The notes under the pieces were generated by a model. It had not been told where the DNA came from and did no database searches. It was given only the letters and a program-made list of their open reading frames with translations. This document shows positions 313 to 53,300 of a DNA stretch of 64,000 nucleotides, one piece after another. How positions within the stretch are numbered: position 1 is the stretch's first letter; each line of letters begins with the position of its first letter. Where the stretch lies: positions 124,001 to 188,000 of the IMG/VR virus record IMGVR_UViG_3300042923_000601. One strand, given 5' to 3'. Position numbers and translations under genes: made by a program.

Positions 313-324
313 AACAACATGATA
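313..324 (+). promoter_or_regulatory. AR9-type late promoter AACA-N6-TA
   Basis: AACA ACATGA TA upstream of the giant fibre gene; the same motif precedes many structural genes in the window. Confidence 0.65.
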
Positions 325-369
325 AGTACATGTATCAAAATCATACTTACACGAAGGGGGATAAGCCCG

Positions 370-23455: not shown

Positions 23456-23469
23456 ATTGTGTCTGCCTC

Positions 23470-30844: not shown

Positions 30845-31852
30845 TTAAATTGTCCCGCGCTTAGTTAGCGAATGGTAGTATTCTTCTGCTGACCAAGTCT
30901 GCGGACGATATACTGGTACATATGTGTCAATATAGTCCATCATGGTTTTATATGGCACAGTATTAACCAACACCCTCAGGCCGTTCGGTAATAAGCATAT
31001 TGCTCTATGAGTAGAGCGTGGATCGCGCGGGTAATCGGTATTGTATATGAAATGTGCTGCAAGAACCCGATTTCCAGCCTTCTTAGATAAACGACGGAGG
31101 ACACGTCTCTCCTTTCGAGATAAGCCATTCTTAGCATCAATGTTCCATTTGATATAAGGCTCTCTCCTCGGTGAGAACGGAGTTCTTGCAGATTGTCCCT
31201 CCAGTATAATAAGTTCCTGATGCTCAGGTTTAAAGTCTGCACCAAATGGCTTGAGTGTATCGCCTATCGTAGAGTCACCCTTTATACCAATTGTCTGGAA
31301 TAATGTATGGCCGAGTGGTTTGAGTGCAATTCGGTCACCATCAAAATCAGGTGGCTGCTTACCCTCGTGTATATGCAACTGCTCAACGGGCATATACAAT
31401 CTGTCACCGTCGAAGTTAGCATCCCATCTTGATCTGTCAAATGCCCCGAGGTCCTCAACGGGAATGTCATTGACCGCAGGATTTGCCTTGAGTAATTCCT
31501 TTAGTCTAGATTTCGGCATGACAAGGGCGTCATCAATCTCAGCATCGCGCCCCAATGATCCCTTGGTATGTACATACGCGAGGAGCGAATCGCTGATACG
31601 CTTCGAATTGGCAACATCACCTTCTGCATACCTTGAAATCGCATCGTTTGCCTCTGACCCTAACCCCACATCGATAGGATGGTCAGGTAGACAGTCCAGT
31701 AGGCGTTGATGTTCCTCAATAGACATTTCAATTTCGTTTGGCTTTCCATTAGGGAGAATACTGGCCCGTGCTGAAAAGCTCTTTGGTCTATCATTATTAC
31801 CTTTCCCGAAAAGTCTATTCAGCATTCCTTTTACAGCTGCTCTCTTTGTCAT
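30845..31852 (-). CDS. Hypothetical protein with RNAP beta'-like motifs (degenerate DPBB-like)
   Basis: Start ATG 31852 after AAGGAG; KGMLNRLFGK..SFSARASILPN.KPNEI, WDANFDGD and PDFDGD. Confidence 0.65.
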   Translation of the reverse strand: MTKRAAVKGMLNRLFGKGNNDRPKSFSARASILPNGKPNEIEMSIEEHQRLLDCLPDHPIDVGLGSEANDAISRYAEGDVANSKRISDSLLAYVHTKGSLGRDAEIDDALVMPKSRLKELLKANPAVNDIPVEDLGAFDRSRWDANFDGDRLYMPVEQLHIHEGKQPPDFDGDRIALKPLGHTLFQTIGIKGDSTIGDTLKPFGADFKPEHQELIILEGQSARTPFSPRREPYIKWNIDAKNGLSRKERRVLRRLSKKAGNRVLAAHFIYNTDYPRDPRSTHRAICLLPNGLRVLVNTVPYKTMMDYIDTYVPVYRPQTWSAEEYYHSLTKRGTI

Positions 31853-31888
31853 ACGAATTTCTCCTTTTAGTGGGTTATTGTGCACATT

Positions 31889-31966: not shown

Positions 31967-32149
31967 CTATTCTCTGAGTCGAACTTCATATCGGTCAGAT
32001 ACGTCTTCATTCGACAGCCATGTGTCTCCACCCATGCAGGCAGCAGTGAGTTCATACACAAAGCCATCTACTCCAACGTAAAGCCGACTATCTTCAGAAT
32101 TAACTGCGACATCGTTTTGTTTATCCCATATGACGATTTGTATTGGCAT
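31967..32149 (-). CDS. Hypothetical protein (60 aa)
   Basis: Coupled to the upstream gene; terminator at 31928-31960. Confidence 0.55.
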   Translation of the reverse strand: MPIQIVIWDKQNDVAVNSEDSRLYVGVDGFVYELTAACMGGDTWLSNEDVSDRYEVRLRE

Positions 32150-32829
32150 TAGAGTCCCTCCGGTGGAGACAGTCTCTCTACAGCATCGAGAGCGAGCCTG
32201 ATGACGTACTCTCGGCGGCTTTCTTTAGCTCTCTTCGCCAATTCGTGATCGTCAGGGAACATAACCGATCTGGTTTCGATTACTATCTTGGCACCAGCAT
32301 GTTTACCGCTGGCTGCATATAGTGCGAATTGAGTTGGGCGCGCCACATTATCAAATGTGCGATCCACTTCCCAACCTGCTGGGAGTGCATTATCAATATC
32401 ATTATGATACCATGGTATATCCGATGTGAATTCAAGCTTCTCGGATAAAACGGTTGCTTCCCTTAGCCGTTCCATTGGATCAGACATCACTGTAAGCGGG
32501 CCGATCTTCTCACCTGTAAAATATGAGGTGTAGGCGTATTGCTTAACCTTAACTACATTATTAAAAGCTGCCAACACGATTTCTAATGCATTAGTTATAA
32601 TAGCGTCAGCTATAAGATTAGCCCGGGTAGCACCTGCTTCACCAGCCGTACTCTCATATAGTGAGGCCATATCAACCGAAAGTGGAATTTCCACTGTTGG
32701 ATCATCGATTAGGCTAATTGAGATACATGGAATGGCTGGGGAGTATCTCTTGCGATCTACGTTTAATATCCACCCAGTAGGCAGTTTTGCATTCACTCTA
32801 GCATACGCTTCTTCAATAATTGGTAGCAT
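32149..32829 (-). CDS. Hypothetical protein (226 aa)
   Basis: AAGGAG RBS. Confidence 0.6.
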   Translation of the reverse strand: MLPIIEEAYARVNAKLPTGWILNVDRKRYSPAIPCISISLIDDPTVEIPLSVDMASLYESTAGEAGATRANLIADAIITNALEIVLAAFNNVVKVKQYAYTSYFTGEKIGPLTVMSDPMERLREATVLSEKLEFTSDIPWYHNDIDNALPAGWEVDRTFDNVARPTQFALYAASGKHAGAKIVIETRSVMFPDDHELAKRAKESRREYVIRLALDAVERLSPPEGL

Positions 32830-32905: not shown

Positions 32906-33649
32906 TTAACGCCAGGTGGCATCCACGTACGTGATTGCACGATCGCTGACAATGTCAGCTGTTTCAGGGGCATCGAATTGAAGACCAAGAATGTCCACAA
33001 CAGCCTGATCCAAGACACTGGCTGCCACATCCAAGAGTTCTCTCATTTCGAACGGGTTTGTTTTGGTGATTACTTGGCGCGTTTGGTATACCACGCGATT
33101 CTGACCCACTTCGGTATGTGGGTTGTGCTTAATCGCAAGCTGCTGGAATACTACATATGTAGCATCTGTAATGATGACATGGTCTGATGGTATACGAATG
33201 TCAAGTGACAAGACGTTAACCTCGGACCCGTTATGCGTAACCGTTTGTGTGCCGTGTTTGTACGGTTTAAGTTCAACTGCGCCGTCAGTCACAATCTGGT
33301 ATGCGTCAATGACATTAGGTTTAACGGAGAACCGAGCCGGGATAGCGACCCGAGGTTCTTTGTTAATCACCCGTGTCAAGCCGTATTTATCAAGAAGCTG
33401 CTGGAATGCATCCGACCGGAAGTAGAAATACTCCTCAGTTGGGCTTTGTACAATGACAATTTCGCCGTCTTCCAGCTTATGGTGAAGCTGCTTTCCTTTG
33501 ACAACGTACAAGTAGCCGTTATCAACGTAGATACGATACCCTTCGATTTCAAATTGATTCTTAGGAGATGTCGATTTAGTAGCATCTTCCACGTCAATTC
33601 GAACTCGGGTATACTTTTTAGAATTGGTCTGTGAGCTTATAACATGCAT
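32906..33649 (-). CDS. Hypothetical protein (247 aa)
   Basis: GGCGGGG RBS; terminator at 32867-32892. Confidence 0.6.
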   Translation of the reverse strand: MHVISSQTNSKKYTRVRIDVEDATKSTSPKNQFEIEGYRIYVDNGYLYVVKGKQLHHKLEDGEIVIVQSPTEEYFYFRSDAFQQLLDKYGLTRVINKEPRVAIPARFSVKPNVIDAYQIVTDGAVELKPYKHGTQTVTHNGSEVNVLSLDIRIPSDHVIITDATYVVFQQLAIKHNPHTEVGQNRVVYQTRQVITKTNPFEMRELLDVAASVLDQAVVDILGLQFDAPETADIVSDRAITYVDATWR

Positions 33650-35038: not shown

Positions 35039-35851
35039 TTATTCGGCAGTGTCGTTAATCATGTCGTACACTTTGTGCGCCACGTTAATAGCGTCTTCTT
35101 TGCTCCAGCGATCACGTTTCTTGGAAACGTCAGCTGCAGCGATTGCCTTCTTGACGCGTTTAGCAGCCTTTTCGCTGTGGTTTTCATACAGCCCAATTGC
35201 TTTGACCACGGAACCCTTCTTAACTTCGTCCAGATCATCGCATTGGCCGATGTACAGTACGATGCGAGTAATCGCATGCTTTCCTTCCAGCTTGTCAAGC
35301 GCCTTCACGCCGTCGAAGGAGAGCGATACGTTTTCCTTTGCATAGTCCTGCATGTAGGATTTGAATTTCTTGTTGCGCTTGGATTCGCCTTTGGTGGATT
35401 TCCAGTTGTCCTTAACGGACTTCAGGTAATCACCAAGCTTGATACGTTTAACACCGAAGGTGTCCTTGAAGTACTCCGCCAGTGCTTGCAGGAAGCCGGT
35501 TTTCCATTCTTCGTCGGATACAACGAGAACCGGAATATAAGTTCCTTCATTCAAGCCCCGGATGATGGTGTAGACAAAGAATTCCTTCTCGCTCTGCTTC
35601 AGCTCTTTAGCATATGCCTTAGCGAACTTCTTTTTGGCCTTCTTACTGACATTGTCTCCAGTAACAGTTGCCAGAAGCTCGGCAGATGGGCGCAGTGCGC
35701 TGAGTGTATCATTGCCGATAACGACTTCATCGTCGCCATCTTTCATTGTCAGTTTCAGTTCCGGTGACATGAGATACACGAATGTGTTTTCCAGTGGACG
35801 GGAACCATCAGCTGCCAACTTTTCGAACTTGCTTTCGTTTACAATAATCAT
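35039..35851 (-). CDS. Hypothetical Lys-rich protein (270 aa)
   Basis: AGGAGG RBS; late-type AACA CTCCAA TG at 35887-35898. Confidence 0.65.
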   Translation of the reverse strand: MIIVNESKFEKLAADGSRPLENTFVYLMSPELKLTMKDGDDEVVIGNDTLSALRPSAELLATVTGDNVSKKAKKKFAKAYAKELKQSEKEFFVYTIIRGLNEGTYIPVLVVSDEEWKTGFLQALAEYFKDTFGVKRIKLGDYLKSVKDNWKSTKGESKRNKKFKSYMQDYAKENVSLSFDGVKALDKLEGKHAITRIVLYIGQCDDLDEVKKGSVVKAIGLYENHSEKAAKRVKKAIAAADVSKKRDRWSKEDAINVAHKVYDMINDTAE

Positions 35852-37736: not shown

Positions 37737-38327
37737 TTACAATCCATGCTTGGTCCAGAAGCTCTCAGTAATATCCTGACGCCCTTCTTTAATATTACGT
37801 AGTGCTTCTTTGAAGTCCTCCAGATTCTCGTCATACTGAGTTCCTGATAGGCGACTTCTATCTTTGTCAGCCATTTGACTGATAAGTTTCCTATGATCCT
37901 TCTTACTGAGATGGACTTGGTCATATGACTTGTACTCCATCATCGAAGCAAGTTTGCCCTTCTTCTTCCTCTCTTTCGCCAGTTTTTTGTTTTTCTTCTT
38001 GGTCTTCTGGATGTCCCGACGAAGACCAGCCAATGTTTTGGCTGGTTTAGAATTCAAAGGTCGATTTGTTTCATTTGGAATTTCCGGTTCATCCGGGGTC
38101 CTAAGATGTTCCTGCGCAGCCCATTCCTCTTCTTTAACCAAGAATTGAATAAACTGTTCCTTTCGTGTAGGTGATAGACTATCATAATAAATTTTGACAT
38201 TCCCAGACAGTTTGCTTTCGATGAACTCTCCCTTGGTTACATGGGGATTCTCATCGTGAAGTTTTTTGTCTAGCTTATCTAATTTGCCAAGCAACTTATT
38301 CAGCTTTTTGGTACCTTTCTTTTTCAT
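37737..38327 (-). CDS. Hypothetical Lys-rich protein
   Basis: Likely start MKKKGTKK at 38327, overlapping the RNase H 3' end. Confidence 0.6.
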   Translation of the reverse strand: MKKKGTKKLNKLLGKLDKLDKKLHDENPHVTKGEFIESKLSGNVKIYYDSLSPTRKEQFIQFLVKEEEWAAQEHLRTPDEPEIPNETNRPLNSKPAKTLAGLRRDIQKTKKKNKKLAKERKKKGKLASMMEYKSYDQVHLSKKDHRKLISQMADKDRSRLSGTQYDENLEDFKEALRNIKEGRQDITESFWTKHGL

Positions 38328-39057
38328 CCATGATGCCGCCTTTCTTCTGCGACTTTCTAATGATACCACGACGGAGAAGCCCGTCATCTAATTCTTCAGT
38401 TGCAAGTTGATCCACCTCCATATTACATACAAGTAGACGAAGTAATTCTAGACTAGAAATTGACATCTTATTCTTACGATAAAAGGTTTCCTTAGCTTTA
38501 ATAAATTTCGAATTACTAAATAGCTCATTATGCAGTTTACCTAAGAGTTCTTTATCAGGCACTCCATGTACTAAACAATCTTTAAGTCGACGAATACTTT
38601 GCTTGAAGAACTTCTTATCAATACAGTGACTATTCAAATGCAAGAAATGAATATTGTATTTCGAATTCATCAAGAATCGGTGATAGATTTCCTCATATAG
38701 TTCGTGACTAGCTACAGGTTCACCTTTAGCTGTCCGCATAACGCCACCTTTAGAATCTTTAACCCATTGGAATATCCGATACTCTAAAGCTTCTTTTGTG
38801 ATCAAATTGTCGGTAAATAAATTTATGGTATAGGGAGGCTTGACTTTTTCCTTATCGACCTTTTTGATTGCTTGGTCAAAAGCTTCCAGCGCCGATAGAA
38901 TTCCATCAATTTCAGCATGATTCCCAGTTTCTCCTACCATAAACTTGCTACCTGCCGTAATTGTGCGTCCGATTATACATAATTGGTAGGCGCTTGAGCT
39001 GTAGAATTCAGCATCGTGGACGTAGGCCGCGCCGTCGGTGAAAATTTCAAATACCAC
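38296..39057 (-). CDS. rnhA: Ribonuclease HI-like protein
   Basis: IFTDGA, NHAEIDGI, LFTDN, WVKDSKG..RTAKGEPV and HLNSH...NMEVDQLA. Confidence 0.8.
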   Translation of the reverse strand: MVFEIFTDGAAYVHDAEFYSSSAYQLCIIGRTITAGSKFMVGETGNHAEIDGILSALEAFDQAIKKVDKEKVKPPYTINLFTDNLITKEALEYRIFQWVKDSKGGVMRTAKGEPVASHELYEEIYHRFLMNSKYNIHFLHLNSHCIDKKFFKQSIRRLKDCLVHGVPDKELLGKLHNELFSNSKFIKAKETFYRKNKMSISSLELLRLLVCNMEVDQLATEELDDGLLRRGIIRKSQKKGGIMDEKERYQKAE

Positions 39058-39230: not shown

Positions 39231-39974
39231 CTACATATAGCCCTTATCTCTCTTGATATCATGCAAGACTTTCTCAAATGCATCCACCTTTAGGAAACCA
39301 GGGCACTCATAGTAGAGCATTTTAGGTTTCATGTAATTCGGGATGATGTCTTCGAACTTCTCATACCGGACAGAGAGGTCTTGAAGGTATTCGTAATTTT
39401 CCCGAGTAGAATCCGGAATCCACTTCTTATACTCTTTGTAGAATGCATGGAAGTCCCATGGGTCGTCGATAAATTGTAGCGGTACAAAGACTTCAGGTGC
39501 ATTCTCACTATGAATCAGGGAGTGAGTTGTCTTATCTAGAGGTACTAAGCCGACCTGTCCGGTGAAGTGGAGATACATGACTTCATGTGCAACCTCCAAA
39601 GCATCCAGGCTTTCACCCATTTCTTGACGTTTACGTGCAACTGCATACACAATATCCTCCAGGGTGAACGGTGTGTGGTGAATCTCGATAGAGAACTTCT
39701 TGTCCGCCACATCCTCTATACCCTTGAAGAACATACTTTTATTCATACCACGGTGTACCTTTAAAAAAGGTATGAGCCTGGTCTTGTACTCGAACGACCC
39801 ACGAACGGTCTTCTTATACTCATTCATTGCACGGCGCAGTTCCTTTGGATTATCAAAGTCAAAAGCCGGGTCAAACTCAATAGGTTCAAGACTATCTTCG
39901 TCAATATGCTTAATGACGACCTCATCATGGCTAGTCTCAGCATATGCTTTTAAATCAATTTTTGGGCTTCTCAT
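39231..39974 (-). CDS. HNH-like protein, paralog of 28850-29479
   Basis: Likely start ATG 39974 after AGGAGGAG; IEIHHTP...LVPLDKTTHSLIH; late promoter AACA GCCAAT TA at 40011-40022. Confidence 0.55.
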   Translation of the reverse strand: MRSPKIDLKAYAETSHDEVVIKHIDEDSLEPIEFDPAFDFDNPKELRRAMNEYKKTVRGSFEYKTRLIPFLKVHRGMNKSMFFKGIEDVADKKFSIEIHHTPFTLEDIVYAVARKRQEMGESLDALEVAHEVMYLHFTGQVGLVPLDKTTHSLIHSENAPEVFVPLQFIDDPWDFHAFYKEYKKWIPDSTRENYEYLQDLSVRYEKFEDIIPNYMKPKMLYYECPGFLKVDAFEKVLHDIKRDKGYM

Positions 39975-40092
39975 GGTCAGGACTCTCCTCCTATATAGCG
40001 TAGTTGCCTTTAATTGGCTGTTGGTTAACTCCGGATAGGTTCCATAAACGACAAAAAAGAAGAGAGCCATTTGGCCCTCTTCTACAACGTGA

Positions 40093-40629
40093 TCAATAAT
40101 CGTCGTCATCGTCTTCATTCCTAGTGACGATGACACCAAGCGGGCCCGGATTTGCTGGTGGAATAGTCAGACCAATGTCGTCCAGTCCTTCATCATCCTC
40201 AGCGTCATCATCTTCGTCGTCAGCTTCAGCCGCGTTTTCAGCTGCGCGAGTAGCAAAGAGTTCAAGCTCCTCTTTAGCTGTCTCAAACGAATGATGGAAG
40301 TCCTGTGCTTCGTCAGGGATCAGGTTTGTTCTAATATTAAACACACCATAACCCTGAACGTAGTCGTTCTCCGGAGCCTCAACCGCTTCAGATTCCTCAC
40401 TATAGATGTCGACAACGTCGCCGTCATCATCGACTGTGGCATACAGCGGTCTGGTTTCATACCGGCCACGTCTAGCGTACTTAACCGCCGCATCCTCGTC
40501 GCGATCGAAATCAAGCAAGGTCTCATCGCATGTGCGGCACATTAAAACGACGTTGTCGTCACCATACTGTATGGCCTTGATCTTGTGTCCAACGTGCGGT
40601 TCCAAATCGTAGAATCCTTCCAATGCCAT
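40093..40629 (-). CDS. Highly acidic protein with a putative Zn motif
   Basis: HVGH...CRTC and D/E-rich tracts; early-type promoter at 40676-40689. Confidence 0.65.
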   Translation of the reverse strand: MALEGFYDLEPHVGHKIKAIQYGDDNVVLMCRTCDETLLDFDRDEDAAVKYARRGRYETRPLYATVDDDGDVVDIYSEESEAVEAPENDYVQGYGVFNIRTNLIPDEAQDFHHSFETAKEELELFATRAAENAAEADDEDDDAEDDEGLDDIGLTIPPANPGPLGVIVTRNEDDDDDY

Positions 40630-41371: not shown

Positions 41372-41938
41372 TTATATTCTGCTCACTGTAAGATCAAATA
41401 CTATACCAGAGTATAATGCGCTCGACATTGATGCATCCTTGGTATACATATGATCTTCGATCTCGTACTTGATCAGAATCTGATTGATATCCGACTCTGT
41501 GATAAAGACATCCCGGAAATGAGTAGGTGTGAGGTCATCGTTATGGTCTTCCAAATATTCCCTGAGGGTCTCATAGAAATTCGAATAGCCCTCAGCGTTA
41601 TCGTTATAAAGGACGTACTGGATTTCATCATCCTCCATTTTCAGATAATCTGTGATGATATCTGCGATCTCAGCAGCGATGTTCTCATCACCCTGGGCGT
41701 TCTGGATGGTCACGCTGACTGTCACGTCAGAGTTAAAGAATCTGGAGTCAGTTTCTTCAGTGATGATATCCTGGAGGATACCTTGGATATTAGAAGTATC
41801 CACATTAGGCCCAACCAGATTGAAGGCTCTGACATATGGACCGTGCATAATCAGAATAGCAACTTCTTGAACTTCCTCATTGTCGTCCATCGACGCATAG
41901 ATAACAGCTTTTGGAACTCTTGTGATTGGTAGTTTCAT
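41372..41938 (-). CDS. Hypothetical acidic protein (188 aa)
   Basis: Overlaps the upstream stop (ATGA); AGGAG RBS. Confidence 0.65.
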   Translation of the reverse strand: MKLPITRVPKAVIYASMDDNEEVQEVAILIMHGPYVRAFNLVGPNVDTSNIQGILQDIITEETDSRFFNSDVTVSVTIQNAQGDENIAAEIADIITDYLKMEDDEIQYVLYNDNAEGYSNFYETLREYLEDHNDDLTPTHFRDVFITESDINQILIKYEIEDHMYTKDASMSSALYSGIVFDLTVSRI

Positions 41939-42933
41939 CTTCGATCATCTCCTAGTATAATATATGACATATTGCTATCAATACGAAGCATCGTCCATAC
42001 CAGATCACTGATGGTCTTAGTATACGTCTTGGCTGGAGGCTCTGCATGATACTCAAACAACTCTGCCATCTCACTGAATGAAATAGAGATAAAAGCGTCA
42101 ACCATTACGGATGATGGCAAGACGGCATCTAGTACCGACTTAGACCGTTTACGTGACCGAACGAACCGTGTGATAAATCGAAGGACTCGATTCGTATTGA
42201 CATCTATCTGGACACGGTCGGAGTCAAGGTTTGCATCCGGTGTAAGATCACTAAGCCGAAGTGTGGTTGGTGTCTCCGTGATAAAAGCATCATCAGATTC
42301 AAACCGAATCCCTTGGTGGGTACAATAGTCATTAGCGACAACGTTATATCCATCCAGTACAAGATCACGGTAGATATACTGAGGAACTTTTAACTGAATC
42401 GTTACGGAAAAGAGATAGCTCAGTTCTTCTCTGGATAATTCGGATGCACTGAGTGCGGCCAAGAAATCTCGACCCAGCGTCCGCATGTCGTTAAGGATGT
42501 TATGTGCGAAGTTAGATTGATAATGGAATTCGGTGTCTTTCGATTTCCATTCTCCCCCGCTTATCGGGTCTTTCCGGGCATTGATGAAACGAGTGGTTTG
42601 AGACAACCGTGACAACTGATACGCGATATCATTGGTTTCCGCCATTTGGATAATATCCTCATAGGCACCAACTGTCACGCTCATGTAGTAGTGGTTATCC
42701 GTCTCAACCAACTTAATGTATTGCCGGTGAGGCGACTTAATATTCATGATCTGAAGAAGTTCGGTTGAAAGGTATTCATCTTCCCGTTTTGGGATTTCGA
42801 CAATAAGTAACAGGTGGCGGTAGCTGCGACTATCATGCTCGCTAATATCATCCAGACCATATTTATTGGCCAGTATACGGGAGATATAGGAGCTAATATT
42901 CCTACCATTTGGGGTAAAATACAGCAATTTCAT
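41935..42933 (-). CDS. ThyX-fold-like protein lacking the catalytic RHRx7SxR motif
   Basis: FSVTIQLKVPQYIYRDL and KSVLDAVLPSS...FISISFSEMAELFEYHAEPPAK mirror the ThyX FTFxxKAPIFVARQ and ARxVLP...NxRxLxxFxxLRxxxxAQ segments. Confidence 0.45.
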   Translation of the reverse strand: MKLLYFTPNGRNISSYISRILANKYGLDDISEHDSRSYRHLLLIVEIPKREDEYLSTELLQIMNIKSPHRQYIKLVETDNHYYMSVTVGAYEDIIQMAETNDIAYQLSRLSQTTRFINARKDPISGGEWKSKDTEFHYQSNFAHNILNDMRTLGRDFLAALSASELSREELSYLFSVTIQLKVPQYIYRDLVLDGYNVVANDYCTHQGIRFESDDAFITETPTTLRLSDLTPDANLDSDRVQIDVNTNRVLRFITRFVRSRKRSKSVLDAVLPSSVMVDAFISISFSEMAELFEYHAEPPAKTYTKTISDLVWTMLRIDSNMSYIILGDDRR

Positions 42934-43024
42934 TAGTGATCCTCCTTTAATATTCCGGTAAAGTTATCCTATTCTGATGTCGTATTTGGAATTAGTTACT
43001 ATTGCCGTAATTACCTTGATTTCG

Positions 43025-43037
43025 GGTTATATATCAT
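43025..43037 (+). promoter_or_regulatory. Early-type promoter variant GGTTATATATCAT
   Basis: Upstream of 43075. Confidence 0.45.
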
Positions 43038-43074
43038 CTACGTAGAAACCAATACAAATTAGGAGGAATTTAAT

Positions 43075-43710
43075 ATGTCAACAGTAAAAATCTCTCGTGA
43101 AAACCGCAAAGGTCCAGTTGGATATGCAGCTCGTATTTACAAGGTGGTAGAAGAAGGACATCAAGCAGGACGGTCACCTCGGAAAATTTCCAAGTCCGTT
43201 CGCGAAATCCTTGGGCAGGTGAAAGAAAAGGACATGGCTGAAACTGCCACGCTTCTATTCGATGATCTGCTGGTCGATCACGACCTCTACACCTTGTTCG
43301 CACGGGTACAAGCCAATCTGGAAGTTGAAGCTTTCACTGAGAAATTCAGAGCACTGCAAGCCAATGCCGAGAAAGCCCCACTCTTCAAGGTTAACGGCTA
43401 TGACTTCACTGACAAGGATGGGGTGAAAGCTGCTGCCCGTACTGAGGCTAAGGCTGATGGTGCTGATGATATGTGGGCAGCTGAGGATGAAGAATCTGAA
43501 GAACCACGCGTTGTCCTGACCAATACGAAGAAAGACGGCGTAGAAAAAGAAGACAAGAAGCCGAACTTCTTCACGATGGATAAGGAAGAACGTAACGCTC
43601 TGATCAAAGAAGAGCTGGAACTGCGTCCTCGTATCATCAAAGCCAAAATTGACACACAGGCTCGGATGTCATGGTTCCACCTGAAACATGCATTTGGTTT
43701 CAAAGGATAA
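43075..43710 (+). CDS. Hypothetical charged protein (211 aa)
   Basis: AGGAGG RBS; terminator at 43710-43734. Confidence 0.7.
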   Translation: MSTVKISRENRKGPVGYAARIYKVVEEGHQAGRSPRKISKSVREILGQVKEKDMAETATLLFDDLLVDHDLYTLFARVQANLEVEAFTEKFRALQANAEKAPLFKVNGYDFTDKDGVKAAARTEAKADGADDMWAAEDEESEEPRVVLTNTKKDGVEKEDKKPNFFTMDKEERNALIKEELELRPRIIKAKIDTQARMSWFHLKHAFGFKG

Positions 43711-44228: not shown

Positions 44229-44789
44229 TTATGAAATCATGAGTTTATCATAGCAAGCCTTGACGACGCGAGCGTCGTGCAGCGCGTTACGTTTATTGCC
44301 CGGTACACAGTGATCCACGAAGTCTTCGCGTGTGACATCAGGGTCAACGCCTTTCGTAGTCATCAGTGTACAAATATCCATTGGGATATATGAAATCTGT
44401 CTTGGGATTGCATATTCGGGTGCCCACAGTTCCCGGAAAAGTGTCCAATCATAGTTAAGGCAATCCGACCATACGGTGACACCACCTGTATCGACGTCTT
44501 TTGCCACTCTGTTGATCCACTCTCCAAGTTTTGTACGCACGAACCGTTTATGCCCCTTATACCAGAGCGTGTCACCCTGATCTTTTACCCACACTTCACC
44601 GTCGCTGTCATTCATGACAAGATTGTCAATGACATTAGTCAGCAGCCAAGTGTCACCAGCTACATGATCGCGATTGTAGTCGGTAAGTTCCGCATAAAAA
44701 CTTTTACCGGTTTCGGTTACAAACCCAATACTAACCAGAGTCGTATCTTGACGTAGCCCTGTGTATTGAGCTCGCATAAATAAATTCAT
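44229..44789 (-). CDS. DEDDh 3'-5' exo(ribo)nuclease-like protein (Rv2179c/DUF5051-type) with substituted catalytic residues
   Basis: TGLRQDTTLVSIGFVTETGKSFYAE, DCLNYDW, PMDICT and NALHDAR; the usual DTEF reads RAQY and HNAL reads RNAL. Confidence 0.7.
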   Translation of the reverse strand: MNLFMRAQYTGLRQDTTLVSIGFVTETGKSFYAELTDYNRDHVAGDTWLLTNVIDNLVMNDSDGEVWVKDQGDTLWYKGHKRFVRTKLGEWINRVAKDVDTGGVTVWSDCLNYDWTLFRELWAPEYAIPRQISYIPMDICTLMTTKGVDPDVTREDFVDHCVPGNKRNALHDARVVKACYDKLMIS

Positions 44790-44846: not shown

Positions 44847-47800
44847 TTATAGTTCCTCTCCATATATTTCCTGATACATCTTAGCAGTATTTTTCTTGGC
44901 CCCAATCAAGATACCGTTAATCATAGAGGTCTTGATCAAGCTAAGAACCATACGTGCTCCGACCGAAATAACCCCGATATACGCATCAATCTTGTCGTTA
45001 GGATCGCTAAGCAAATAGGGTTCTTCGCCTTCCTTGAACACGTCACAGGCGATTGCTTTGGTTGCAACGAATGAAGTCAGCTTATCACCAACGCCGAAAA
45101 CGTCTCTATACTTAGTGTAGATTTCAATCAGGAGACCTTCACCTACACGAGTACCTTTGACCTTTCCTGTGGCATCAGGCGTAACTTGCTCGACTTCAGT
45201 GAGGGTTACATCCAGCATTTTAGCATCAATACCCGTTTCCTTAGATACCCGGCGGAGTACTTTCGCATTTTCTGCTTCGTAGTAGTCGATGACCTTACGG
45301 GCAGATTCAGATAGTTCTTCCTTTGGAACGGTGTAATAAATCTTGATATCCTCGATTACGCCGTTGTGTTTGGATACAACTGGTGTCTTAGACGCTTCCT
45401 TGATATCTCCGCTGAACTCATCTGACATTTTAGCCAGCATTTTATTCGTCAGTTCATCATCATGGGACGTATCGAATATGATCAGAGGGTCGTTAACCTT
45501 GATTTCCTGACCCTTCTTAACGATATAGTCGATATTCGAGTTCCGACCAAGTGTGAGCGGTCTCTTTACAACGATATCCGAACTCATCTTACCAGCTAGT
45601 GGCGTGGATACGATAGTTGAATCCTCGAATACCTTGGAGGAGTACCGGATAGCAATACGGGCAAGTGGTCCTGTCATAGTGACAGGGTTACCTGTACGTT
45701 TGTCAATTGTGAAGAAGTCCTTATTGCAAGCAACAATGGCTCCTTCTTTAAAGGATGCACCAGCCTCAAGTATAGGGGAGAGTTTATTGGAGATGAAGAA
45801 TCCACTACCAGCATTCTTACCCATATCTGGACTGAGGTTAACCGTGTCAATTGTACCGTCCCCATACTTCAAAATCATGGTATGCGAGACGTCATCAATT
45901 TTCAGGATTGTACCGTCTTTTTTAGCTTTGAATACGAAGGTATCCCCGATGATATGCGGGAGGACCTTTTCATATCCCGTTCCAAGTGGAGCACGTTCAC
46001 TACCAACGCAAGCCAAGGTATGACGGCTTTGCGCTGAGGTCATTGCTGTACGTTCAGGGTCATCAGATGACACACCAAACGGGATCAATGATTCGGCAGC
46101 ACTAATCATCTTAGCCGTAGACAGTTGGTTGATCTCGTCTTTATTCTGAGCTACTTTGATGTAACCGCGAGCCGATGTGATATTTGCGTCCAGTGTCAAG
46201 GTACGTGCGATACCAATCGAACCCGAGATCGGGGACGCCTGACTGAGTACGCCGACCATACTCGGATGGTATGAACGTTTCGACAGGTTAAAGGCTCGGT
46301 CTTGGTTCATACCGCCGATACCTTTCCAAGTCGTGGAGGATTTAAGTTCGGCTGTGTAGATTGGGTTAAGGTCAGAGTAGTCTTTGGTTAATTGGTTAGA
46401 CAAGATGTCGACCAATACCGCGTCTTTACGAACTGACATCTTAACCGGGTTAGGATTGTTAGCTGTAAACCGGTACGTTTGGTATGCCTTAGCCAGTGCC
46501 TTATATAAGAAGGCGACCACGGCCTCATTCGACCGCGCCCGGTGAACACTCATGTCACCATCATCTGTCATTGAGTTATCTTCAAGCAGCATGTTAGCAT
46601 ACAGGAAAATGTCAATGAAGTTTGTTGGTAGACCATAGTCGCGGAGTACTTCTTCAGTAACGGGGTCAATCAGCAATTGCTGGAAGTTCTCAAACGCATA
46701 CCCGATATTCTTCCGACCAAAGAGGTTCTCGAAGAGTTCAAAGTACACATCCTTACCCAGAAACTCTTGAATCTTGTAAATCTTCGTTGGGATTTCACAG
46801 AAGCCGTTCATAAGAAGAGAGTTTCTCAGTGGATACATTGGGTATACCAACCAAGCATCTTCAAACTCAATGGCTTCTTCTTCGCCAGACTTAAGGTCAA
46901 GCGCCTTTTTACCATCCTCTTTAGCTATGATGCGGTAGTTGATCTCGGCACGCTTCATCATGGAGAGTAACCCATCAAGGAAGGAAAGAAGGAGAGCGAC
47001 AGGAACTTTCTTTTCCATGATTTTTGCCCGGTTATACATATACTTACGACCTGGACGGATATTCGCGAACGGTTTCTCAAACTCTGGGTTGGTTTTCCCG
47101 ATCTCAGAGATCACGAAGTCCATAAGCTGCATGTTGGTACCTTCAACCTTACTGGACTCCGTATCCAGATAGATAATATCCTTACCGTTACGGATCGCGA
47201 TAGGAAGCTTCGTGCTGGTTGCTTCAGGCACAGGCTTCTTCATATCAGCCAGTAACTGGCGGATGAACTTCTGGTTGAAGAAGATTTCGATATTCGGTGT
47301 TTTGATACGGCGATATTTAGTAGCCAGTTCATCATACTCAATGGTGCGGATGTACTCCCGGTTTGCACGAGTGGATTCACCGACTTCGACCTTTACATCT
47401 TTATGCCGGTTCTCACCAATCGACTTCAGGAATACCGCAACCTTAGGAGAGATAGACTGGCCAAACCGCTGAATGAATACCTTTTGATAGGTTGCAATCT
47501 GGACAGTATCCGGCCCGGTTTTCGTGATCGGGAGAGGAATGATCTGATTGGACATGATCTTCTTATTCCCGCCGACCTTGAGGAATCGACCGTTGATAAA
47601 TTTAGGCATGTTAACCACCACAGTGTGGCGACGGCCAGCCTCATCTTCAAACTTGTACGTATGCTCTTCCAGCGAGTTCAGGGAATCACTGATGTCTTTG
47701 ATCTCAGCATCAATGAGATACAGAGGATGATCCTTATACTGGAACGAGCTAACGATCTTAGCGATGTCGGCACGATACAGCTTTTTCAGGTAGGCTTCAT

Positions 47801-49130
47801 CAAAGTTCGGGAATGTCATTTCTTTGAGAGCCGGGTTAACGGTATCAATAGGGAATGTAACCGGTTCGATCGTATTAGCTTCTGCACGAGCCAACACCTC
47901 ACCCAGTGTCATATCGCCCATCTTAACGTCTTTCATCTCTTGAACCAGCTTAACCTCACGGGCAAGACGTGCTCTGGACTTTGGAACGATGTTTTGCATC
48001 TCTGCTTGAATTCTTTCCAGTTCCATCTCCTTGGTCTCTACAACATCAGCCACTTCTTCAGGTGGTAGTTCAGCCTTAGAGACGTCAACATCAGCTTTAC
48101 CGATCGCGTTATCGACGATCTTACTAACGGCATCGTCCGTTGGCGTAACACCTGATGCGGTTAAATCTTCAACAACTTTATCTGCAATAGCCGTTTTGTT
48201 TATAGCGACTGTTGCATCAGCATTTTGCGCCGCTGGTTCCTGTGAGGTAGTGGCGGCATCTACCTTAGGTTCAATCTTGCGGAACTTCGTCATCAGCGTT
48301 ACGAACTCGTCCGCAGACTTTTCATTAACGGTATCCGGTTCCCACAGAAGAATCTGGTTGCCCGACATGAAGTAGAATTTCCATCCGGCGAAGTTGGTGC
48401 TGAAATAAGCATGGTCATTCGCCAGTTTATTGTAGAACAAGGAAATCCAGTTTGACGTATTCTGGAGACGATAGAGTGTACGATCACGTGGGTCGCTGAT
48501 CCAGTCATCCAGTTGGATAAGCATATGTCGATTTGGGTAATTAGCTGATACAACCTTGTCCGCAGTAAATTCTTTGAAGAGGCGGAAGTACTCATTGACG
48601 CGATTCATCGCAAGACGAGTATCCTTTTCACCAAAGAATCTTTCATTATAAGGACCGATTTCGTAGATATAGTTTTTCCGGTTGAGTGCACTCTGATTGA
48701 GGACTAACGTAAAATGTGGAAGCGTAGGCTGAACCTGCCCTTTGAAAATAGTCTGGGCTTCCATGTCGGATAACCGGTATTTGACAAGTGAATTATATAT
48801 TCTATAATTGTATACACGATCCAGTACATATGCACTGGTGTAGCGCATGAGGATATTTGGCCGGTTAAAGAACTCGACCGTTGACTGGATACTCTTTGTG
48901 ACTGCCACGTATACAGACCCATGATTAATATCCTTAGGATCAGTAGGGAGGCGAAACTGCGATGGACTTCTGTACACCTTGTTTGGAACGAGCTGTTCCA
49001 AGCCCAGCCCTGCTTCAAGTAGTATTTGGGCATTTTCTGTTAACAAATCATCGTCCACTGAATCAGGTGGGGATGGCATTTGGTACGTGCCTGCTTGAAT
49101 AGCACGAAGTTGGTCTTGTAGATTATTCAT
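44847..49130 (-). CDS. Phage RNA polymerase beta-like subunit, unsplit, with a long N-terminal extension (virion-RNAP type)
   Basis: RAFNLSKRSYH, SPISGSIGI, AESLIPF, DDPERTAMTSAQSRH, FEDSTIVS and GDKLTSFVATKA; late promoter AACA GACTAA TA at 49175-49186. Confidence 0.9.
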   Translation of the reverse strand: MNNLQDQLRAIQAGTYQMPSPPDSVDDDLLTENAQILLEAGLGLEQLVPNKVYRSPSQFRLPTDPKDINHGSVYVAVTKSIQSTVEFFNRPNILMRYTSAYVLDRVYNYRIYNSLVKYRLSDMEAQTIFKGQVQPTLPHFTLVLNQSALNRKNYIYEIGPYNERFFGEKDTRLAMNRVNEYFRLFKEFTADKVVSANYPNRHMLIQLDDWISDPRDRTLYRLQNTSNWISLFYNKLANDHAYFSTNFAGWKFYFMSGNQILLWEPDTVNEKSADEFVTLMTKFRKIEPKVDAATTSQEPAAQNADATVAINKTAIADKVVEDLTASGVTPTDDAVSKIVDNAIGKADVDVSKAELPPEEVADVVETKEMELERIQAEMQNIVPKSRARLAREVKLVQEMKDVKMGDMTLGEVLARAEANTIEPVTFPIDTVNPALKEMTFPNFDEAYLKKLYRADIAKIVSSFQYKDHPLYLIDAEIKDISDSLNSLEEHTYKFEDEAGRRHTVVVNMPKFINGRFLKVGGNKKIMSNQIIPLPITKTGPDTVQIATYQKVFIQRFGQSISPKVAVFLKSIGENRHKDVKVEVGESTRANREYIRTIEYDELATKYRRIKTPNIEIFFNQKFIRQLLADMKKPVPEATSTKLPIAIRNGKDIIYLDTESSKVEGTNMQLMDFVISEIGKTNPEFEKPFANIRPGRKYMYNRAKIMEKKVPVALLLSFLDGLLSMMKRAEINYRIIAKEDGKKALDLKSGEEEAIEFEDAWLVYPMYPLRNSLLMNGFCEIPTKIYKIQEFLGKDVYFELFENLFGRKNIGYAFENFQQLLIDPVTEEVLRDYGLPTNFIDIFLYANMLLEDNSMTDDGDMSVHRARSNEAVVAFLYKALAKAYQTYRFTANNPNPVKMSVRKDAVLVDILSNQLTKDYSDLNPIYTAELKSSTTWKGIGGMNQDRAFNLSKRSYHPSMVGVLSQASPISGSIGIARTLTLDANITSARGYIKVAQNKDEINQLSTAKMISAAESLIPFGVSSDDPERTAMTSAQSRHTLACVGSERAPLGTGYEKVLPHIIGDTFVFKAKKDGTILKIDDVSHTMILKYGDGTIDTVNLSPDMGKNAGSGFFISNKLSPILEAGASFKEGAIVACNKDFFTIDKRTGNPVTMTGPLARIAIRYSSKVFEDSTIVSTPLAGKMSSDIVVKRPLTLGRNSNIDYIVKKGQEIKVNDPLIIFDTSHDDELTNKMLAKMSDEFSGDIKEASKTPVVSKHNGVIEDIKIYYTVPKEELSESARKVIDYYEAENAKVLRRVSKETGIDAKMLDVTLTEVEQVTPDATGKVKGTRVGEGLLIEIYTKYRDVFGVGDKLTSFVATKAIACDVFKEGEEPYLLSDPNDKIDAYIGVISVGARMVLSLIKTSMINGILIGAKKNTAKMYQEIYGEEL

Positions 49131-50302: not shown

Positions 50303-53300
50303 ATGGCTAAAGAAAACACAGCGGTTAAATCATACGTGGCTAATATCACACAGTCACTACTGCATGCGGGAAAGATCGTTGTTAAGGATGCAATGCCGAC
50401 GATGAGTTCGACGGTAGACAAGAACCAGCAGCTTGTAAAGTCGGGTCTTACTTACACCCGAGAGTTTCTTTCTCACAAAGGCCCTGCCAGTGGTGGATCA
50501 AACAAACTCCTCACTAACGTGATGAAAGACGTTGATGCAATCAAGAAGAATGCATTCGAACGTTTGAAGTCTGGTAAACTGACAGACTTCGATAAGCAAA
50601 CGGATGATCTTGATGATCTGCTCAACATGGGAGGCGAATTCGCGATCGATTGGGGTGACAGTAATGGAGACCCTTTCGCTGACCCGAATGAACCTTGGCT
50701 CAATGATGATACAATGGCGTCGATTAAAGCTGTACGGTCGGCTGCCAAGATTCAGCATGATGGTGATAATATCCGAACCAAAGTAATGGTGGATTCGATT
50801 TATCAGTCTGCTGAACAGGCTGCCAACTACACGGCAAAGACAGCTACCAAGCTTCAAACGATCAAGATGAATATGGCAGCTCAAATGCATACGGAAACTG
50901 TCAAACTGATGGGTAATACAAATGCTCTCCTTCAGAACATGGTTAGTTTCAATAATAACCAAGTCGTAGAGCAGATGAACCGTCAGACGGACTTCTACCA
51001 AGCTGTCATCCTTGAACTTCAAGAGATTAAGGCGTCTGTTAAGATGCCTGAAAAGCAGCAGAGAGGACTTGAAACGTCTGCTGTGGATGAGGTATTCGGT
51101 AGCGGTGGTCTTGATCTGGCAGCCTACGCTAAGCAAATCAAAGGTAACTTCATGAATAGCTCCGTTGGTACCATGCTTGGTATGGGTAAAACGGGTGCTG
51201 ACATGATGGGCGGTAGTGTAATGGATCGCCTGAAGAACGATCCTTTTGGTGTAGTCATTAGTATGCTTGGTGCTGGACTACTCCCTAAGAGCATTGGTTC
51301 GGCGATGAAGAATCTTGACAATTCCTTCTCGGGTCTGATGTCCGCTATGGTACTTAGGCTCAATGGTATGAGAGATAATATCTCGATTCTGGGTGATCTG
51401 TCTCTCCCAAACCTGCTTGGTCTTAATATCGGTCAGAAAAAGACGTTCAATGTGGGTGGTTACCACCGGGAAGCGATGCAATATAACGGTAAAGCAGATA
51501 AAGCGCTGACTGAAGTTATCCCGACCTTACTGAGTCATATTCTCTCCACTCTGCAAGGTACTTCATCCGTTGCTCACTTCGATTACACTACCGGCCGGTT
51601 TAGAGACGGTGCGGCAATAATCAAAGAGAATAATCAACGGGTTAAGGATGCGAAACGTAGTCCTCTGCTGGATGTTAAATCCTCCATGAGACGGTCTCTG
51701 CGTGCATTACCAGGCGGTGATTCAGCAGCTATGGAGAAAGACCTGGACACATTCCTGGAGTATATCGTGGATAGTGGAAAGCTGTACAACCCACGTAAGG
51801 AAACCAGTGCACAAGAAATGAAGAATAAGGGCTTAGACCTTAGTAGTCCTGATGTGTACAACGCCTTGCGGGCGGCATTCCTTAATATGCCTAAGCATTT
51901 ACAGAACACTGCACCACGAGGGGCACTTGAGGGTCGAGGTGCTGGCGACCGTACCATGCGGACAATCGAAAATGATCTGTTTGACACCGGTCTGTCGTCT
52001 GTATATGGTGACTTAACCAAGGTTACTGGCCCGACCGTTAAAGGCCCGGGTGCAATTACACCGGTATCACTCCTGAAAGATATCAAAAATATTCTCATAG
52101 ACGGGATTATCGTCTATGGGGCAGGGAATGTGAACGATCGTAACCCGTCTTCACCTAAGCAGATTCTTAAACGTCGCACGAAGAATCGCCGGGCTAACTC
52201 CGAGGAAGCTCGTGCTGAACTGCAGGCTAGAATTCGGGAAACCGAAGCCAATGGTCCTCGTCCAGAGCTTGATGACATCACAAGAATGCCGTTTGACGAC
52301 ATGCGTACAAGAATGGCTTCGGCTAATAATCCGGGTGACGATCGTGATCGTATGAACTCCGGATTCCTTCGTCGTTTGCTTAATGAACGCAGTATGGTCA
52401 GACGCGCTGGGATGATTCGAGATAAGGTTACCAACCCATCTCAGCTTATTACTGGTATCATTGGCCGTATGGATAGCATGATCTATCGTATGATTTACGG
52501 GAAAGATGATAGTAGTGGTGGAAGTGACGACGCTGACGGCGACGGTGGGGGCGGTGGACGACGCGGTATCATCGGGCGTATCACAGATGCGCTCAGACGT
52601 GGGATGGATAAATCTATCCGGTTTATTGATGCCAAAATCTTCACGCCCATGCATGAGAAGTTCTTCGGTGAACAAGGTCTCTTCACTAAATTTATGGAAA
52701 GCTTCGATCCATTTATTGATAGAATGAAAGAGATGGGTGCTACCGGGTTTAAGAAAGTCACCAAGTTCTTAATGGGTGATAAAAACGCACAGGGATTTTA
52801 TACTGGCGGTGCCCTAGCTGACGTTGGGAACATGTTCGTTGATTTCGGTAATGCTACCCGTAACCTTTTGACCGGTGGCGGTTACACTAGATCAGACGGT
52901 ACCCAAGTTGGTGAGAACGGTCAAAGCGTGTTCTCCTACGTGAAGCAGTACTCCAAAGCCTTATTTGAGAATATCAAAGTGGGGTTGTTTGGGGAAAAGA
53001 AGGAGATCATCAAAGAGGATGGTACTGTTGTCCTCCAGCATGATGGAACCGGTCTGTTTAACGGTGTTGTAGATAGCCTTAAGAACTCTATGAGCGTTTT
53101 CACCTCGATGTTTAAAACCAAAGAGGGCGAAGACCCAAGTGATGTTCAGAAGACTGTTGATAAGTGGAAGGGTGAGCTGAAAGGTTTCCTTCCAAAAGGT
53201 ATTGCCGGTGGAACCGCTGGTATGATGGCAAGCATGTTGTTACCGGGCGGACCAATCCTCGGCGCAATGCTTGGTTCCACATTAGCGTTTGCTTCACACT

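What the first reader, a model, noticed from the sequence alone, without database searches (positions are those of the whole stretch)
41935..42933. Apparently inactive ThyX-like protein, a possible dominant-negative of thymidylate synthesis
The C-terminal ~170 aa follow the ThyX pattern, but the RHRxxxxxxxSxR signature is replaced by LDGYNVVANDYC. The N-terminal part looks like a partial second copy. ThyX is a homotetramer with inter-subunit active sites, so a dead copy could poison a host ThyX or sequester dUMP/FAD, favouring dUTP. That would fit the AR9-type promoters. It requires a ThyX-using host, which is unknown here.
Basis: inference. Interest (0 to 1): 0.62.

Follow-up and report, generated by a model that had tools for sequence, protein, structure and literature searches.

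The report
Catalytically dead ThyX-fold phage protein
A jumbo phage from soil carries a conserved gene whose protein has the shape of the flavin-dependent thymidylate synthase ThyX but none of its working residues; since the phage also has a real ThyX and a real dUTPase, the protein is more likely a re-used scaffold than a poison of thymidylate synthesis.

Summary
The ORF at 41935-42933 (-) is a real gene: 332 aa, strong AAGGAGG ribosome site, 11 full-length relatives. No sequence method links it to ThyX (Pfam, NCBIfam, PHROGs and hhalign all blank). Two independent structure predictions place it in the ThyX fold. Residues 140-331 match solved ThyX chains (Z 5.6-4.5, next hit 2.9). The whole length matches long phage ThyX proteins (TM 0.63-0.72). 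No family member keeps the RHR...SxRY signature or the other dUMP-binding arginines, so "inactive ThyX-like" holds.

The dominant-negative, dUTP-favouring reading does not hold. The same 246.7-kb genome encodes a bona fide long-form ThyX and a canonical dUTPase. It lacks the known dU-DNA enzyme families (zinc dCTP/dCMP deaminase, NT5C dTMPase, Ham1 dTTPase). The dU phages PBS1 and phiR1-37 lack this family.

The AR9-type promoters are real: both early and late consensus motifs are enriched. The gene sits in a conserved block and is tightly coupled to an acidic 188-aa gene in seven contigs. The best reading is a non-catalytic ThyX-fold pseudoenzyme acting with that partner; its actual role is unknown. 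Interest is moderate.

The parts
41935..42933 (-). CDS of the ThyX-fold protein (332 aa, P0001), stop codon included
   Evidence: ORF list and translation. Eleven full-length relatives at 21-34% identity. AF2 model pLDDT 78.
42941..42947 (-). Shine-Dalgarno AAGGAGG, 7 nt before the ATG
   Evidence: Read directly from the sequence. AGGAGG is the most enriched hexamer upstream of this genome's genes.
42934..43074 (.). 141-nt divergent intergenic region upstream of the gene; it holds no AR9-type early or late consensus for this gene
   Evidence: Motif scans. The only near match is TATATCAT at -45 of the opposite gene, 43075-43710 (+).
42595..42933 (-). N-terminal module, residues 1-113 (strand-helix-helix-strand-helix-hairpin-two helices). 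It includes the family-invariant His40 and the start motif MKLxYxTPN.
   Evidence: Secondary structure of the model. His40 aligns with the first His of the ThyX GH.S..H motif of Jenst ThyX in 11 of 11 members. Weak RNAP-L/alpha-like hits match those given by a real ThyX core.
42538..42591 (-). Low-confidence linker, residues 115-132; variable in length across the family
   Evidence: pLDDT below 50; gapped alignment columns.
41941..42516 (-). C-terminal ThyX-fold domain, residues 140-331
   Evidence: VIA-align Z 5.6-4.5 to five ThyX/PolB chains, covering chain residues about 8-209. Foldseek against PDB. A weak in-register HMM alignment of the LP-strand-helix region to T. maritima ThyX 124-205.
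42322..42357 (-). Residues 193-204 (LDGYNVVANDYC), at the place of the RHR...SxRY ThyX signature; not conserved in the family
   Evidence: Alignments A1 and A4 and the column table.
41372..41938 (-). Downstream acidic 188-aa gene (pI 4.1). Its ATG overlaps the stop of the ThyX-fold gene (ATGA), making it the likely functional partner.
   Evidence: ORF coordinates and sequence. The same ~185-aa gene follows within -4 to +20 nt in all seven contexts. Orthology shown by alignment A3.

Best explanation
The gene encodes a non-catalytic descendant of a long-form phage ThyX, i.e. a ThyX-fold pseudoenzyme.

Shown:
- It is a real, conserved gene.
- Its predicted structure is ThyX-like over the whole length, closest to the ~300-350-aa phage ThyX type of Brevibacillus phage Jenst and crAss-like phages.
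- No member of its family keeps the residues that bind FAD and dUMP in ThyX: the RHR triad, the Ser/Arg/Tyr of SxRY, and the equivalents of the two later arginines.
- The phage has a separate working set for dTMP synthesis (long-form ThyX plus dUTPase).

Inferred:
- The protein no longer makes or binds thymidylate precursors.
- It has been kept as a folding and assembly module.
- It acts as a complex with the translationally coupled acidic 188-aa protein encoded just downstream.
- It works within a conserved block that also holds two RNase H-like genes and lies beside a virion RNA polymerase beta-like subunit gene.
- It does not antagonise thymidylate synthesis.
For: Real gene.

Small family: an exhaustive phmmer search of 1.84 billion representatives found 13 hits. 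Eleven are full-length or partial relatives, one is a fragment of the protein itself, and one is a low-complexity false hit.

Fold. Calibration: the genome's genuine ThyX gives Z 9.0-7.4 to the same five PDB chains.

Loss of motifs.

Own ThyX and dUTPase.

Conserved synteny and tight coupling to the ~185-aa gene.

Co-occurrence: the closest relative (P0004) and a 58%-identical ThyX (P0017) come from the same sample.

Full-length conservation at only 21-34% identity, with a confidently predicted fold, argues for purifying selection on structure rather than decay.
Against: - No direct evidence for any function or partner. The pairing with the 188-aa protein rests on gene order alone and was not co-folded.
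- Homology to ThyX rests on predicted structures; no sequence statistic supports it.
- Residue mapping at 14% identity is uncertain.
- A few polar residues are conserved (H40, E77, N101, D149, D279; R/K151). They could form a new active or ligand site, which would make it an enzyme after all.
- Its promoter and time of expression are unknown.
Confidence: 0.55

Rival explanations
1. Neofunctionalised enzyme. The ThyX scaffold carries a new active site built from the few conserved polar residues (H40, E77, N101, D149, D279) and acts on a nucleotide or another small molecule, in the way PolB is a re-purposed ThyX.
For: Conserved polar residues in an otherwise very divergent family. PolB appears among the structural hits. 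ThyX paralogs with changed specificity are known (PMC5954106).
Against: Only one invariant column exists among 12 sequences. No conserved arginine cluster is available to hold a nucleotide phosphate. PolB keeps the ThyX motifs, whereas this family keeps none.
Confidence: 0.15
2. Prozyme-like partner of the phage's own ThyX. The dead paralog would bind the active long-form ThyX and tune its activity up or down.
For: Both genes occur in this genome, and both families occur in one related sample. Dead paralogs regulating active ones are known in trypanosomatids (PMC3663545, PMC5201418).
Against: The two genes lie about 124 kb apart. They belong to different long-ThyX architectures: the best BFVD matches of one score TM about 0.22 with the other. 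They share no detectable sequence similarity. The co-fold did not reach the mark (this counts as no evidence either way).
Confidence: 0.08
3. First reader's model. The dead subunit poisons a host ThyX tetramer or sequesters dUMP/FAD, lowering dTMP and favouring dUTP for a uracil-DNA lifestyle.
For: The phage's RNA polymerase and both promoter classes are of the AR9/PBS1/phiR1-37 type, and those phages have dU-DNA. ThyX active sites lie between subunits (Leduc 2004, cited in PMC5954106).
Against: The phage encodes its own ThyX and a canonical dUTPase and lacks Dcd, Dtm and Dtt families. PBS1 and phiR1-37 lack this protein family. The ligand-binding residues needed for sequestration are gone. 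Divergence makes mixed oligomers with a host ThyX unlikely. The host is unknown.
Confidence: 0.05
4. The ThyX resemblance is not homology. It would be a chance or convergent alpha/beta arrangement, or a bias of the structure predictors.
For: All sequence-based tests are negative. Z 5.6 is below the level at which the aligner's notes advise trust.
Against: Two independent predictors (ESMFold in the Atlas, AF2 here) and four search methods all return only ThyX. The top five hits stand clearly above the rest. Weak sequence matches are colinear and in register: the N-terminal LLYxTP strand, His40, and the LP-strand-helix region.
Confidence: 0.07

Closest known systems
Flavin-dependent thymidylate synthase ThyX (Pfam Thy1 PF02511; e.g. 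Thermotoga maritima TM0449, Mycobacterium tuberculosis ThyX, PBCV-1 A674R)
   Same: Same fold for residues 140-331 (Z 5.6-5.1; Foldseek prob 1.0). Same order of strand, helix, signature loop, helices, LP-strand and C-terminal helices.
   Different: No profile match. The RHR, SxRY and later arginines are all missing. There is an extra N-terminal module of about 113 aa. Z is 5.6, against 9.0-7.4 for the genome's real ThyX.
Long-form phage ThyX of the Brevibacillus phage Jenst / crAss-like type (303-346 aa)
   Same: Same length class and a whole-length structural match (BFVD E 2.6e-7, TMq 0.57; Atlas TM 0.63-0.72). Colinear MAFFT alignment with a shared N-terminal LLYxTP strand and His.
   Different: Jenst ThyX keeps GH.S..H, RH, SQRY, ELAR and LRDDVHAQ, and scores 84 bits on TIGR02170. 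The candidate keeps only the first His.
The phage's own long-form ThyX (P0003, 393 aa, genome coordinates 41650-42831, minus strand; family of more than 3900 proteins)
   Same: Same genome and the same superfold.
   Different: A different architecture: a complete ThyX domain first, then a reduced one carrying RHR. Highly conserved, with 74 invariant columns. No detectable similarity to the candidate.
PolB, the UMP/dUMP methylase of polyoxin biosynthesis (a neofunctionalised ThyX paralog)
   Same: A ThyX paralog with a changed role; it appears among the structural hits (Z 4.5).
   Different: PolB is still a flavin-dependent methylase with the ThyX motifs (PMC5954106); the candidate is not.
Catalytically dead paralogs ('prozymes') of trypanosomatid AdoMetDC and deoxyhypusine synthase
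   Same: A dead copy of an oligomeric metabolic enzyme retained under selection.
   Different: Prozymes bind and activate their active paralog (PMC3663545, PMC5201418). Here no interaction with ThyX is shown.

Membership tests
ThyX / FDTS (Pfam PF02511, NCBIfam TIGR02170) | Profile match above the curated cut-off | tested here: not met
   No Thy1 hit at E<=10 for the protein. One of 12 relatives scores E 0.022. NCBIfam gives none.
ThyX / FDTS | ThyX fold | tested here: met
   Predicted models only. Positive control with the genome's real ThyX.
ThyX / FDTS | ThyX signature RHR-(7-8)-S-x-R-Y (FAD and dUMP contacts) | tested here: not met
   Absent in all 12 members. The RH columns fall in a gap. 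The R of SxRY corresponds to D/V/T/K/H/M.
ThyX / FDTS | Later dUMP-binding arginines (T. maritima R147 and R174 equivalents) and the AQxE helix | tested here: not met
   The equivalents are D269 and H296 in this protein and are acidic or variable across the family. The mapping comes from low-identity alignments.
ThyX / FDTS | Bound FAD and dUMP-to-dTMP activity | not testable with these tools
   Needs purified protein or genetic complementation.
ThyX / FDTS | Homo-oligomer with active sites between subunits | not tested
Long-form phage ThyX (Jenst / crAss-like type) | A protein of about 300-350 aa whose whole length superposes | tested here: met
   BFVD TMq 0.57 over 370 columns. Atlas TM 0.63 with 266 residues at 4.2 A. 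ESM model TM 0.72.
Long-form phage ThyX (Jenst / crAss-like type) | Thy1 profile found in two pieces (positions 1-65 and 56-187) with catalytic motifs in the second | tested here: not met
   True for Jenst but not for the candidate.
   PF00383, PF06941 and PF01725 are absent. Thy1 and dUTPase are present. Family list from PMC12697855. PF12917 and dUTPase inhibitors were not searched.
Dead-paralog regulator (prozyme) of ThyX | Binds the active paralog | tested here: inconclusive
   Co-fold score 0.27 against a mark of 0.32; the tool's verdict was 'no answer'.
AR9 / PBS1 / phiR1-37-like jumbo phages (genomic context) | Split multisubunit RNAP closest to that group, with early AAATATATATTAT-N6-G and late AACA-N6-TA/G promoters | tested here: met
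   RNAP beta gives its best hits at 30-33% identity to PBS1, LPJP1, Staphylococcus jumbo phages and phiR1-37. Motif enrichment. Consensus from PMC5312081.

The most novel reading that the evidence does not exclude
A ThyX-fold pseudoenzyme family, always paired with a small acidic protein, has taken on a new non-metabolic job in a thymine-using sister clade of the uracil-DNA jumbo phages. One possibility is a nucleotide-pool sensor or an assembly factor for the replication or transcription machinery. That would make it the first described non-catalytic use of the ThyX fold.
Probability: 0.3. Interest if true: 0.6.

Novelty: new variant of a known kind. Interest (0 to 1): 0.38.

Why it matters
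ThyX is studied as an antibacterial target and as a marker of phage nucleotide metabolism. In the literature I could search, every described ThyX-fold protein is a flavin-dependent methylase. A conserved family that keeps the fold but none of the chemistry would be a first example of exaptation of this fold.

The setting adds interest. The phage uses AR9-type early and late promoters and an AR9-like RNA polymerase, yet it encodes ThyX and dUTPase. It therefore probably has thymine DNA. That makes its clade useful for asking how the uracil-DNA lifestyle, and the uracil-dependent promoter recognition of AR9, arose or was lost.

In practice, the result warns against annotating this gene as a thymidylate synthase on structural similarity alone.

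Tried and rejected
- Family scans of the protein (Pfam, PHROGs, NCBIfam) gave nothing relevant.
- tblastn of the protein and three relatives against 50,697 phage records found no match, so no cultured phage has the family. Megablast of the neighbourhood also found nothing.
- The word-indexed protein search found only a fragment of the protein itself. With the family profile it added nothing new.
- hhalign of the family against long-ThyX profiles, whole and in halves, and against Jenst ThyX was not significant. BLASTP against the phage ThyX and Jenst ThyX was not significant.
- The internal-repeat test of N-terminal against C-terminal half was not significant.
- The profile search of PDB sequences gave only a sub-threshold ThyX hit (E 0.78).
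- Complex prediction of the phage ThyX with this protein returned 'no answer' (0.27 against 0.32). It is no evidence either way.
- Lead rejected: residues 1-100 resemble RNA polymerase alpha / Rpb11 / subunit L (Z 2.0-2.5, 11 of 40 rows). The genuine ThyX of the same genome gives the same hits at Z 4-4.9, so this is a generic property of the ThyX core and not a link to the neighbouring RNAP genes.
- P0015 (540 aa) from the exhaustive search is a low-complexity helical false hit.
- The 188-aa partner gave no usable lead in the ESM Atlas, Pfam, PHROGs or NCBIfam.
- Public runs holding the locus are soil and silage metagenomes, with no RNA data.

Full report
**1. What is there**

The window is bases 124001-188000 of a 246,689-bp viral record judged complete by CheckV. 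The finding's coordinates coincide exactly with a 332-codon ORF on the minus strand, 41935-42933.
- AAGGAGG lies 7 nt before the ATG. AGGAGG is the most enriched upstream hexamer in this genome.
- The stop codon overlaps the ATG of the next gene (ATGA), an acidic 188-aa ORF at 41372-41938.
- G+C and GC3 are typical of the neighbourhood.

This is a real gene.

**2. Sequence-level tests of 'ThyX-like'**

All were negative.
- Pfam shows no Thy1 match even at E<=10. PHROGs and NCBIfam show nothing.
- The word-indexed search of 5.8 billion proteins found only a fragment of the protein itself. Because family scans and the word search left the protein open, I used the exhaustive search of 1.84 billion representatives. 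It found 13 hits: 11 relatives of 223-346 aa at 21-34% identity, the self fragment, and one low-complexity false hit.
- In the alignment of the 12 sequences (A1) only D149 is invariant. M1, H40, E77, N101, L171, L174, D279 and I325 are nearly so.
- One member touches Thy1 at E 0.022. The family profile touches T. maritima ThyX at E 0.78. That match is in the correct register: the LP-strand-helix region against chain residues 124-205.
- hhalign of A1 against a profile of the genome's own ThyX family, whole or in halves, gives probabilities below 1%.
- The N- and C-terminal halves of the family show no similarity to each other.

**3. Fold-level tests**

All point to ThyX.
- The ESM Atlas holds the sequence. 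All 30 feature hits are viral Thy1 clusters (score 0.95, 196 shared features). Its own model matches a 457-aa viral Thy1 protein at TM 0.72 over residues 1-332.
- An AF2 model built on A1 has pLDDT 78 and pTM 0.73.
- Foldseek against PDB ranks ThyX chains first (prob about 1.0, E 2e-3).
- Foldseek against BFVD ranks long phage ThyX proteins first: Brevibacillus phage Jenst (346 aa, E 2.6e-7, TMq 0.57), a 502-aa myovirus protein, and crAss-like ThyX of 303-334 aa.
- VIA-align against 48,161 PDB representatives puts five ThyX-family chains on top, including PolB. They score Z 5.6-4.5 on residues 140-331, and the next hit is Z 2.9.
- The Atlas shape search with the AF2 model gives TM 0.63, with 266 residues aligned at 4.2 A, to a 422-aa viral Thy1 cluster. 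All 30 nearest models are Thy1.
- As a calibration, the genome's genuine ThyX (AF2 pLDDT 80) scores Z 9.0-7.4 against the same five chains.

The candidate is therefore a strongly degenerate but recognisable ThyX fold.

**4. Architecture**

The model has three parts: an N-terminal module (residues 1-113), a disordered linker (115-132), and a complete ThyX-like domain (140-331).

Residues 1-100 gave weak hits to RNA polymerase subunit L / Rpb11 / alpha. The same chains are hit by the core of the genuine ThyX at Z 4-4.9. This is therefore a signature of the ThyX core itself, not a link to the neighbouring RNAP genes.

I fetched the Jenst ThyX (KT151955, 346 aa).
- It matches Pfam Thy1 in two pieces: profile positions 1-65 at its N-terminus and 56-187 at its C-terminus.
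- It keeps GH.S..H, RH, SQRY, ELAR and LRDDVHAQ.
- A MAFFT alignment of the family with Jenst ThyX and its one full-length relative is colinear. The shared features are the N-terminal LLYxTP strand, a His before the second strand, the L(S/T)xxEL helix, and the LP motif.

**5. Inactivity**

In that alignment, only Jenst H46 (equivalent to H40) is conserved in all 11 aligned family members.
- The RH of the signature falls in a gap in every member.
- The Arg of SxRY corresponds to D/V/T/K/H/M (D194 in this protein).
- The Arg of ELAR corresponds to D/E/H/K (D269 here).
- The last Arg corresponds to variable residues (H296 here).

At 14% identity the residue mapping is uncertain. However, the family has no conserved arginine cluster under any register. 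Canonical FAD and dUMP binding is therefore very unlikely.

**6. Genomic and evolutionary context**

The adjacent 1427-aa gene (44847-49130, minus strand) is an RNAP beta-like subunit. Its best matches, at 30-33% identity, are PBS1, a Bacillus jumbo phage, Listeria phage LPJP1, Staphylococcus jumbo phages and Yersinia phage phiR1-37. That is the AR9 group, and PBS1 and phiR1-37 have dU-DNA (PMC12697855, PMC5312081).

- TATATATTAT followed by TG about 5 nt later stands before 22 genes.
- AACA-N6-T[AG] occurs in 24 of 119 other upstream regions against 3.9 expected. These sit at -27 to -60 of large structural genes.
- Both match the published AR9 consensus sequences (PMC5312081).
- The candidate's own 141-nt upstream region has neither motif.

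The genome is not equipped for uracil DNA.
- It encodes a 393-aa ThyX (Pfam 62.6 bits) that belongs to a family of more than 3900 proteins with 74 invariant columns.
- It encodes a dUTPase that passes the NCBIfam equivalog cut-off and carries motifs III and V.
- It lacks ThyA, zinc-type dCMP/dCTP deaminase, NT5C and Ham1 families.
- PBS1 and phiR1-37 have neither Thy1 nor the candidate's family.

The candidate is not a recent duplicate of the phage's ThyX. The two have different best BFVD partners, and each scores TM about 0.22 with the other's partners.

**7. Synteny**

In every contig that carries a relative, the order is the same. A giant C39-peptidase/SLT protein comes first, then the ~1400-aa RNAP subunit on the opposite strand, then small genes. 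Next come the ThyX-fold gene, a ~185-aa gene, a ~240-aa gene, an RNase H-like gene, a ~195-aa gene, a 535-657-aa gene and a ~270-aa gene.
- The ~185-aa gene follows at -4 to +20 nt in seven contexts and is orthologous across them (A3).
- The closest relative and a 58%-identical ThyX come from the same sample.
- Public runs holding the locus are soil and silage metagenomes, and no RNA data exist.

**8. Interpretation**

The best-supported reading is a ThyX-fold pseudoenzyme maintained by selection, probably working with its coupled acidic partner. Its role is unknown.

- the phage's own ThyX and dUTPase;
- the absence of this family in dU phages;
- the loss of the ligand-binding residues needed for sequestration;
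- the extreme divergence of any would-be interface.

A co-fold with the phage ThyX gave no verdict and is not counted either way. I found no literature on non-catalytic ThyX-fold proteins.

**9. Limits**
- The homology claim rests on predicted structures.
- The host is unknown.
- The pairing with the 188-aa protein is inferred from gene order only.
- PF12917-type dTMPases and dUTPase or UDG inhibitors were not searched.

Noticed in passing
window upstream of 40093-40629(-), 38296-39057(-), 16929-20051(-), 23470-24048(-), 30845-31885(-); 22 sites genome-wide: A strongly conserved motif taTATATTATa-N4-5-TG stands 12-110 nt before start codons. It matches the AR9 early (virion RNAP) promoter consensus AAATATATATTAT-N6-G.
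   Followed up: partly
window upstream of 44847-49130(-), 50303-60685(+), 20592-21854(-), 20172-20555(+), 32149-32829(-), 35039-35851(-), 12391-13845(+): aAACA-N6-TA(a) stands at -27 to -60 of starts, in 24 of 119 non-early upstream regions against 3.9 expected. It matches the AR9 late (non-virion RNAP) promoter consensus. From my own knowledge, AR9's late polymerase needs uracil in the template strand, yet this phage encodes dUTPase and ThyX. Whether its polymerase reads thymine is an open question.
   Followed up: partly
window 29538-30011(+) at -26, 32906-33649(-) at -87, 44847-49130(-) at -135; 11 sites genome-wide: A third enriched upstream word, TACTATA, often lies about 20 nt before the start codon, directly ahead of the ribosome site. 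It may be another promoter class or a transcript 5' end signal.
   Followed up: no
window 319-12330(+) and 50303-60685(+): Two giant ORFs of 4003 and 3460 aa. The second carries Peptidase_C39_2, SLT and VanY domains near its C-terminus, suggesting a virion-borne cell-wall-degrading or ejection protein. The first has no Pfam match. A 3111+-aa homolog with C39 and SLT sits at the same place in a related contig (L013).
   Followed up: partly
window 21938-23521(-), 24170-25369(-), 44847-49130(-): Three separate RNA polymerase beta/beta'-like genes (PHROGs 2987, 2962, 3148), as in phiKZ/AR9-type phages with split multisubunit polymerases.
   Followed up: partly
genome coordinates 41650-42831(-), outside the window (locus L001): The phage's genuine ThyX is a 393-aa long form in which the signature is split. 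The complete first domain keeps SEKSARY but has NNE in place of RHR. The reduced second domain supplies RHR and the ER.C..AQ.E helix. The family has more than 3900 members. This looks like a fused pseudo-dimer.
   Followed up: partly
genome coordinates 35229-35843(-), outside the window (locus L006): A canonical trimeric-type dUTPase with a ~55-90-aa N-terminal extension of unknown function.
   Followed up: partly
window 39231-40139(-) and 28850-29479(+): Two paralogous genes of PHROG 12252 (unknown function) on opposite strands about 10 kb apart.
   Followed up: no
window 38296-39057(-) and 44229-44789(-): Two RNase H / 3'-5' exonuclease-like genes (PHROGs 531 and 2259; Pfam Rv2179c-like) flank the block that holds the ThyX-fold gene.
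   Followed up: no
window 40093-40629(-): A very acidic 178-aa protein (pI 4.05; 51 Asp+Glu; a poly-Asp tail) with an early promoter. It could be a DNA mimic or anti-defence candidate.
   Followed up: no
genome coordinates about 118580-118625 and 119180-119226, outside the window: Two consecutive genes (162 and 186 aa) have identical upstream sequences of more than 30 nt, including the early promoter. This suggests a local duplication.
   Followed up: no
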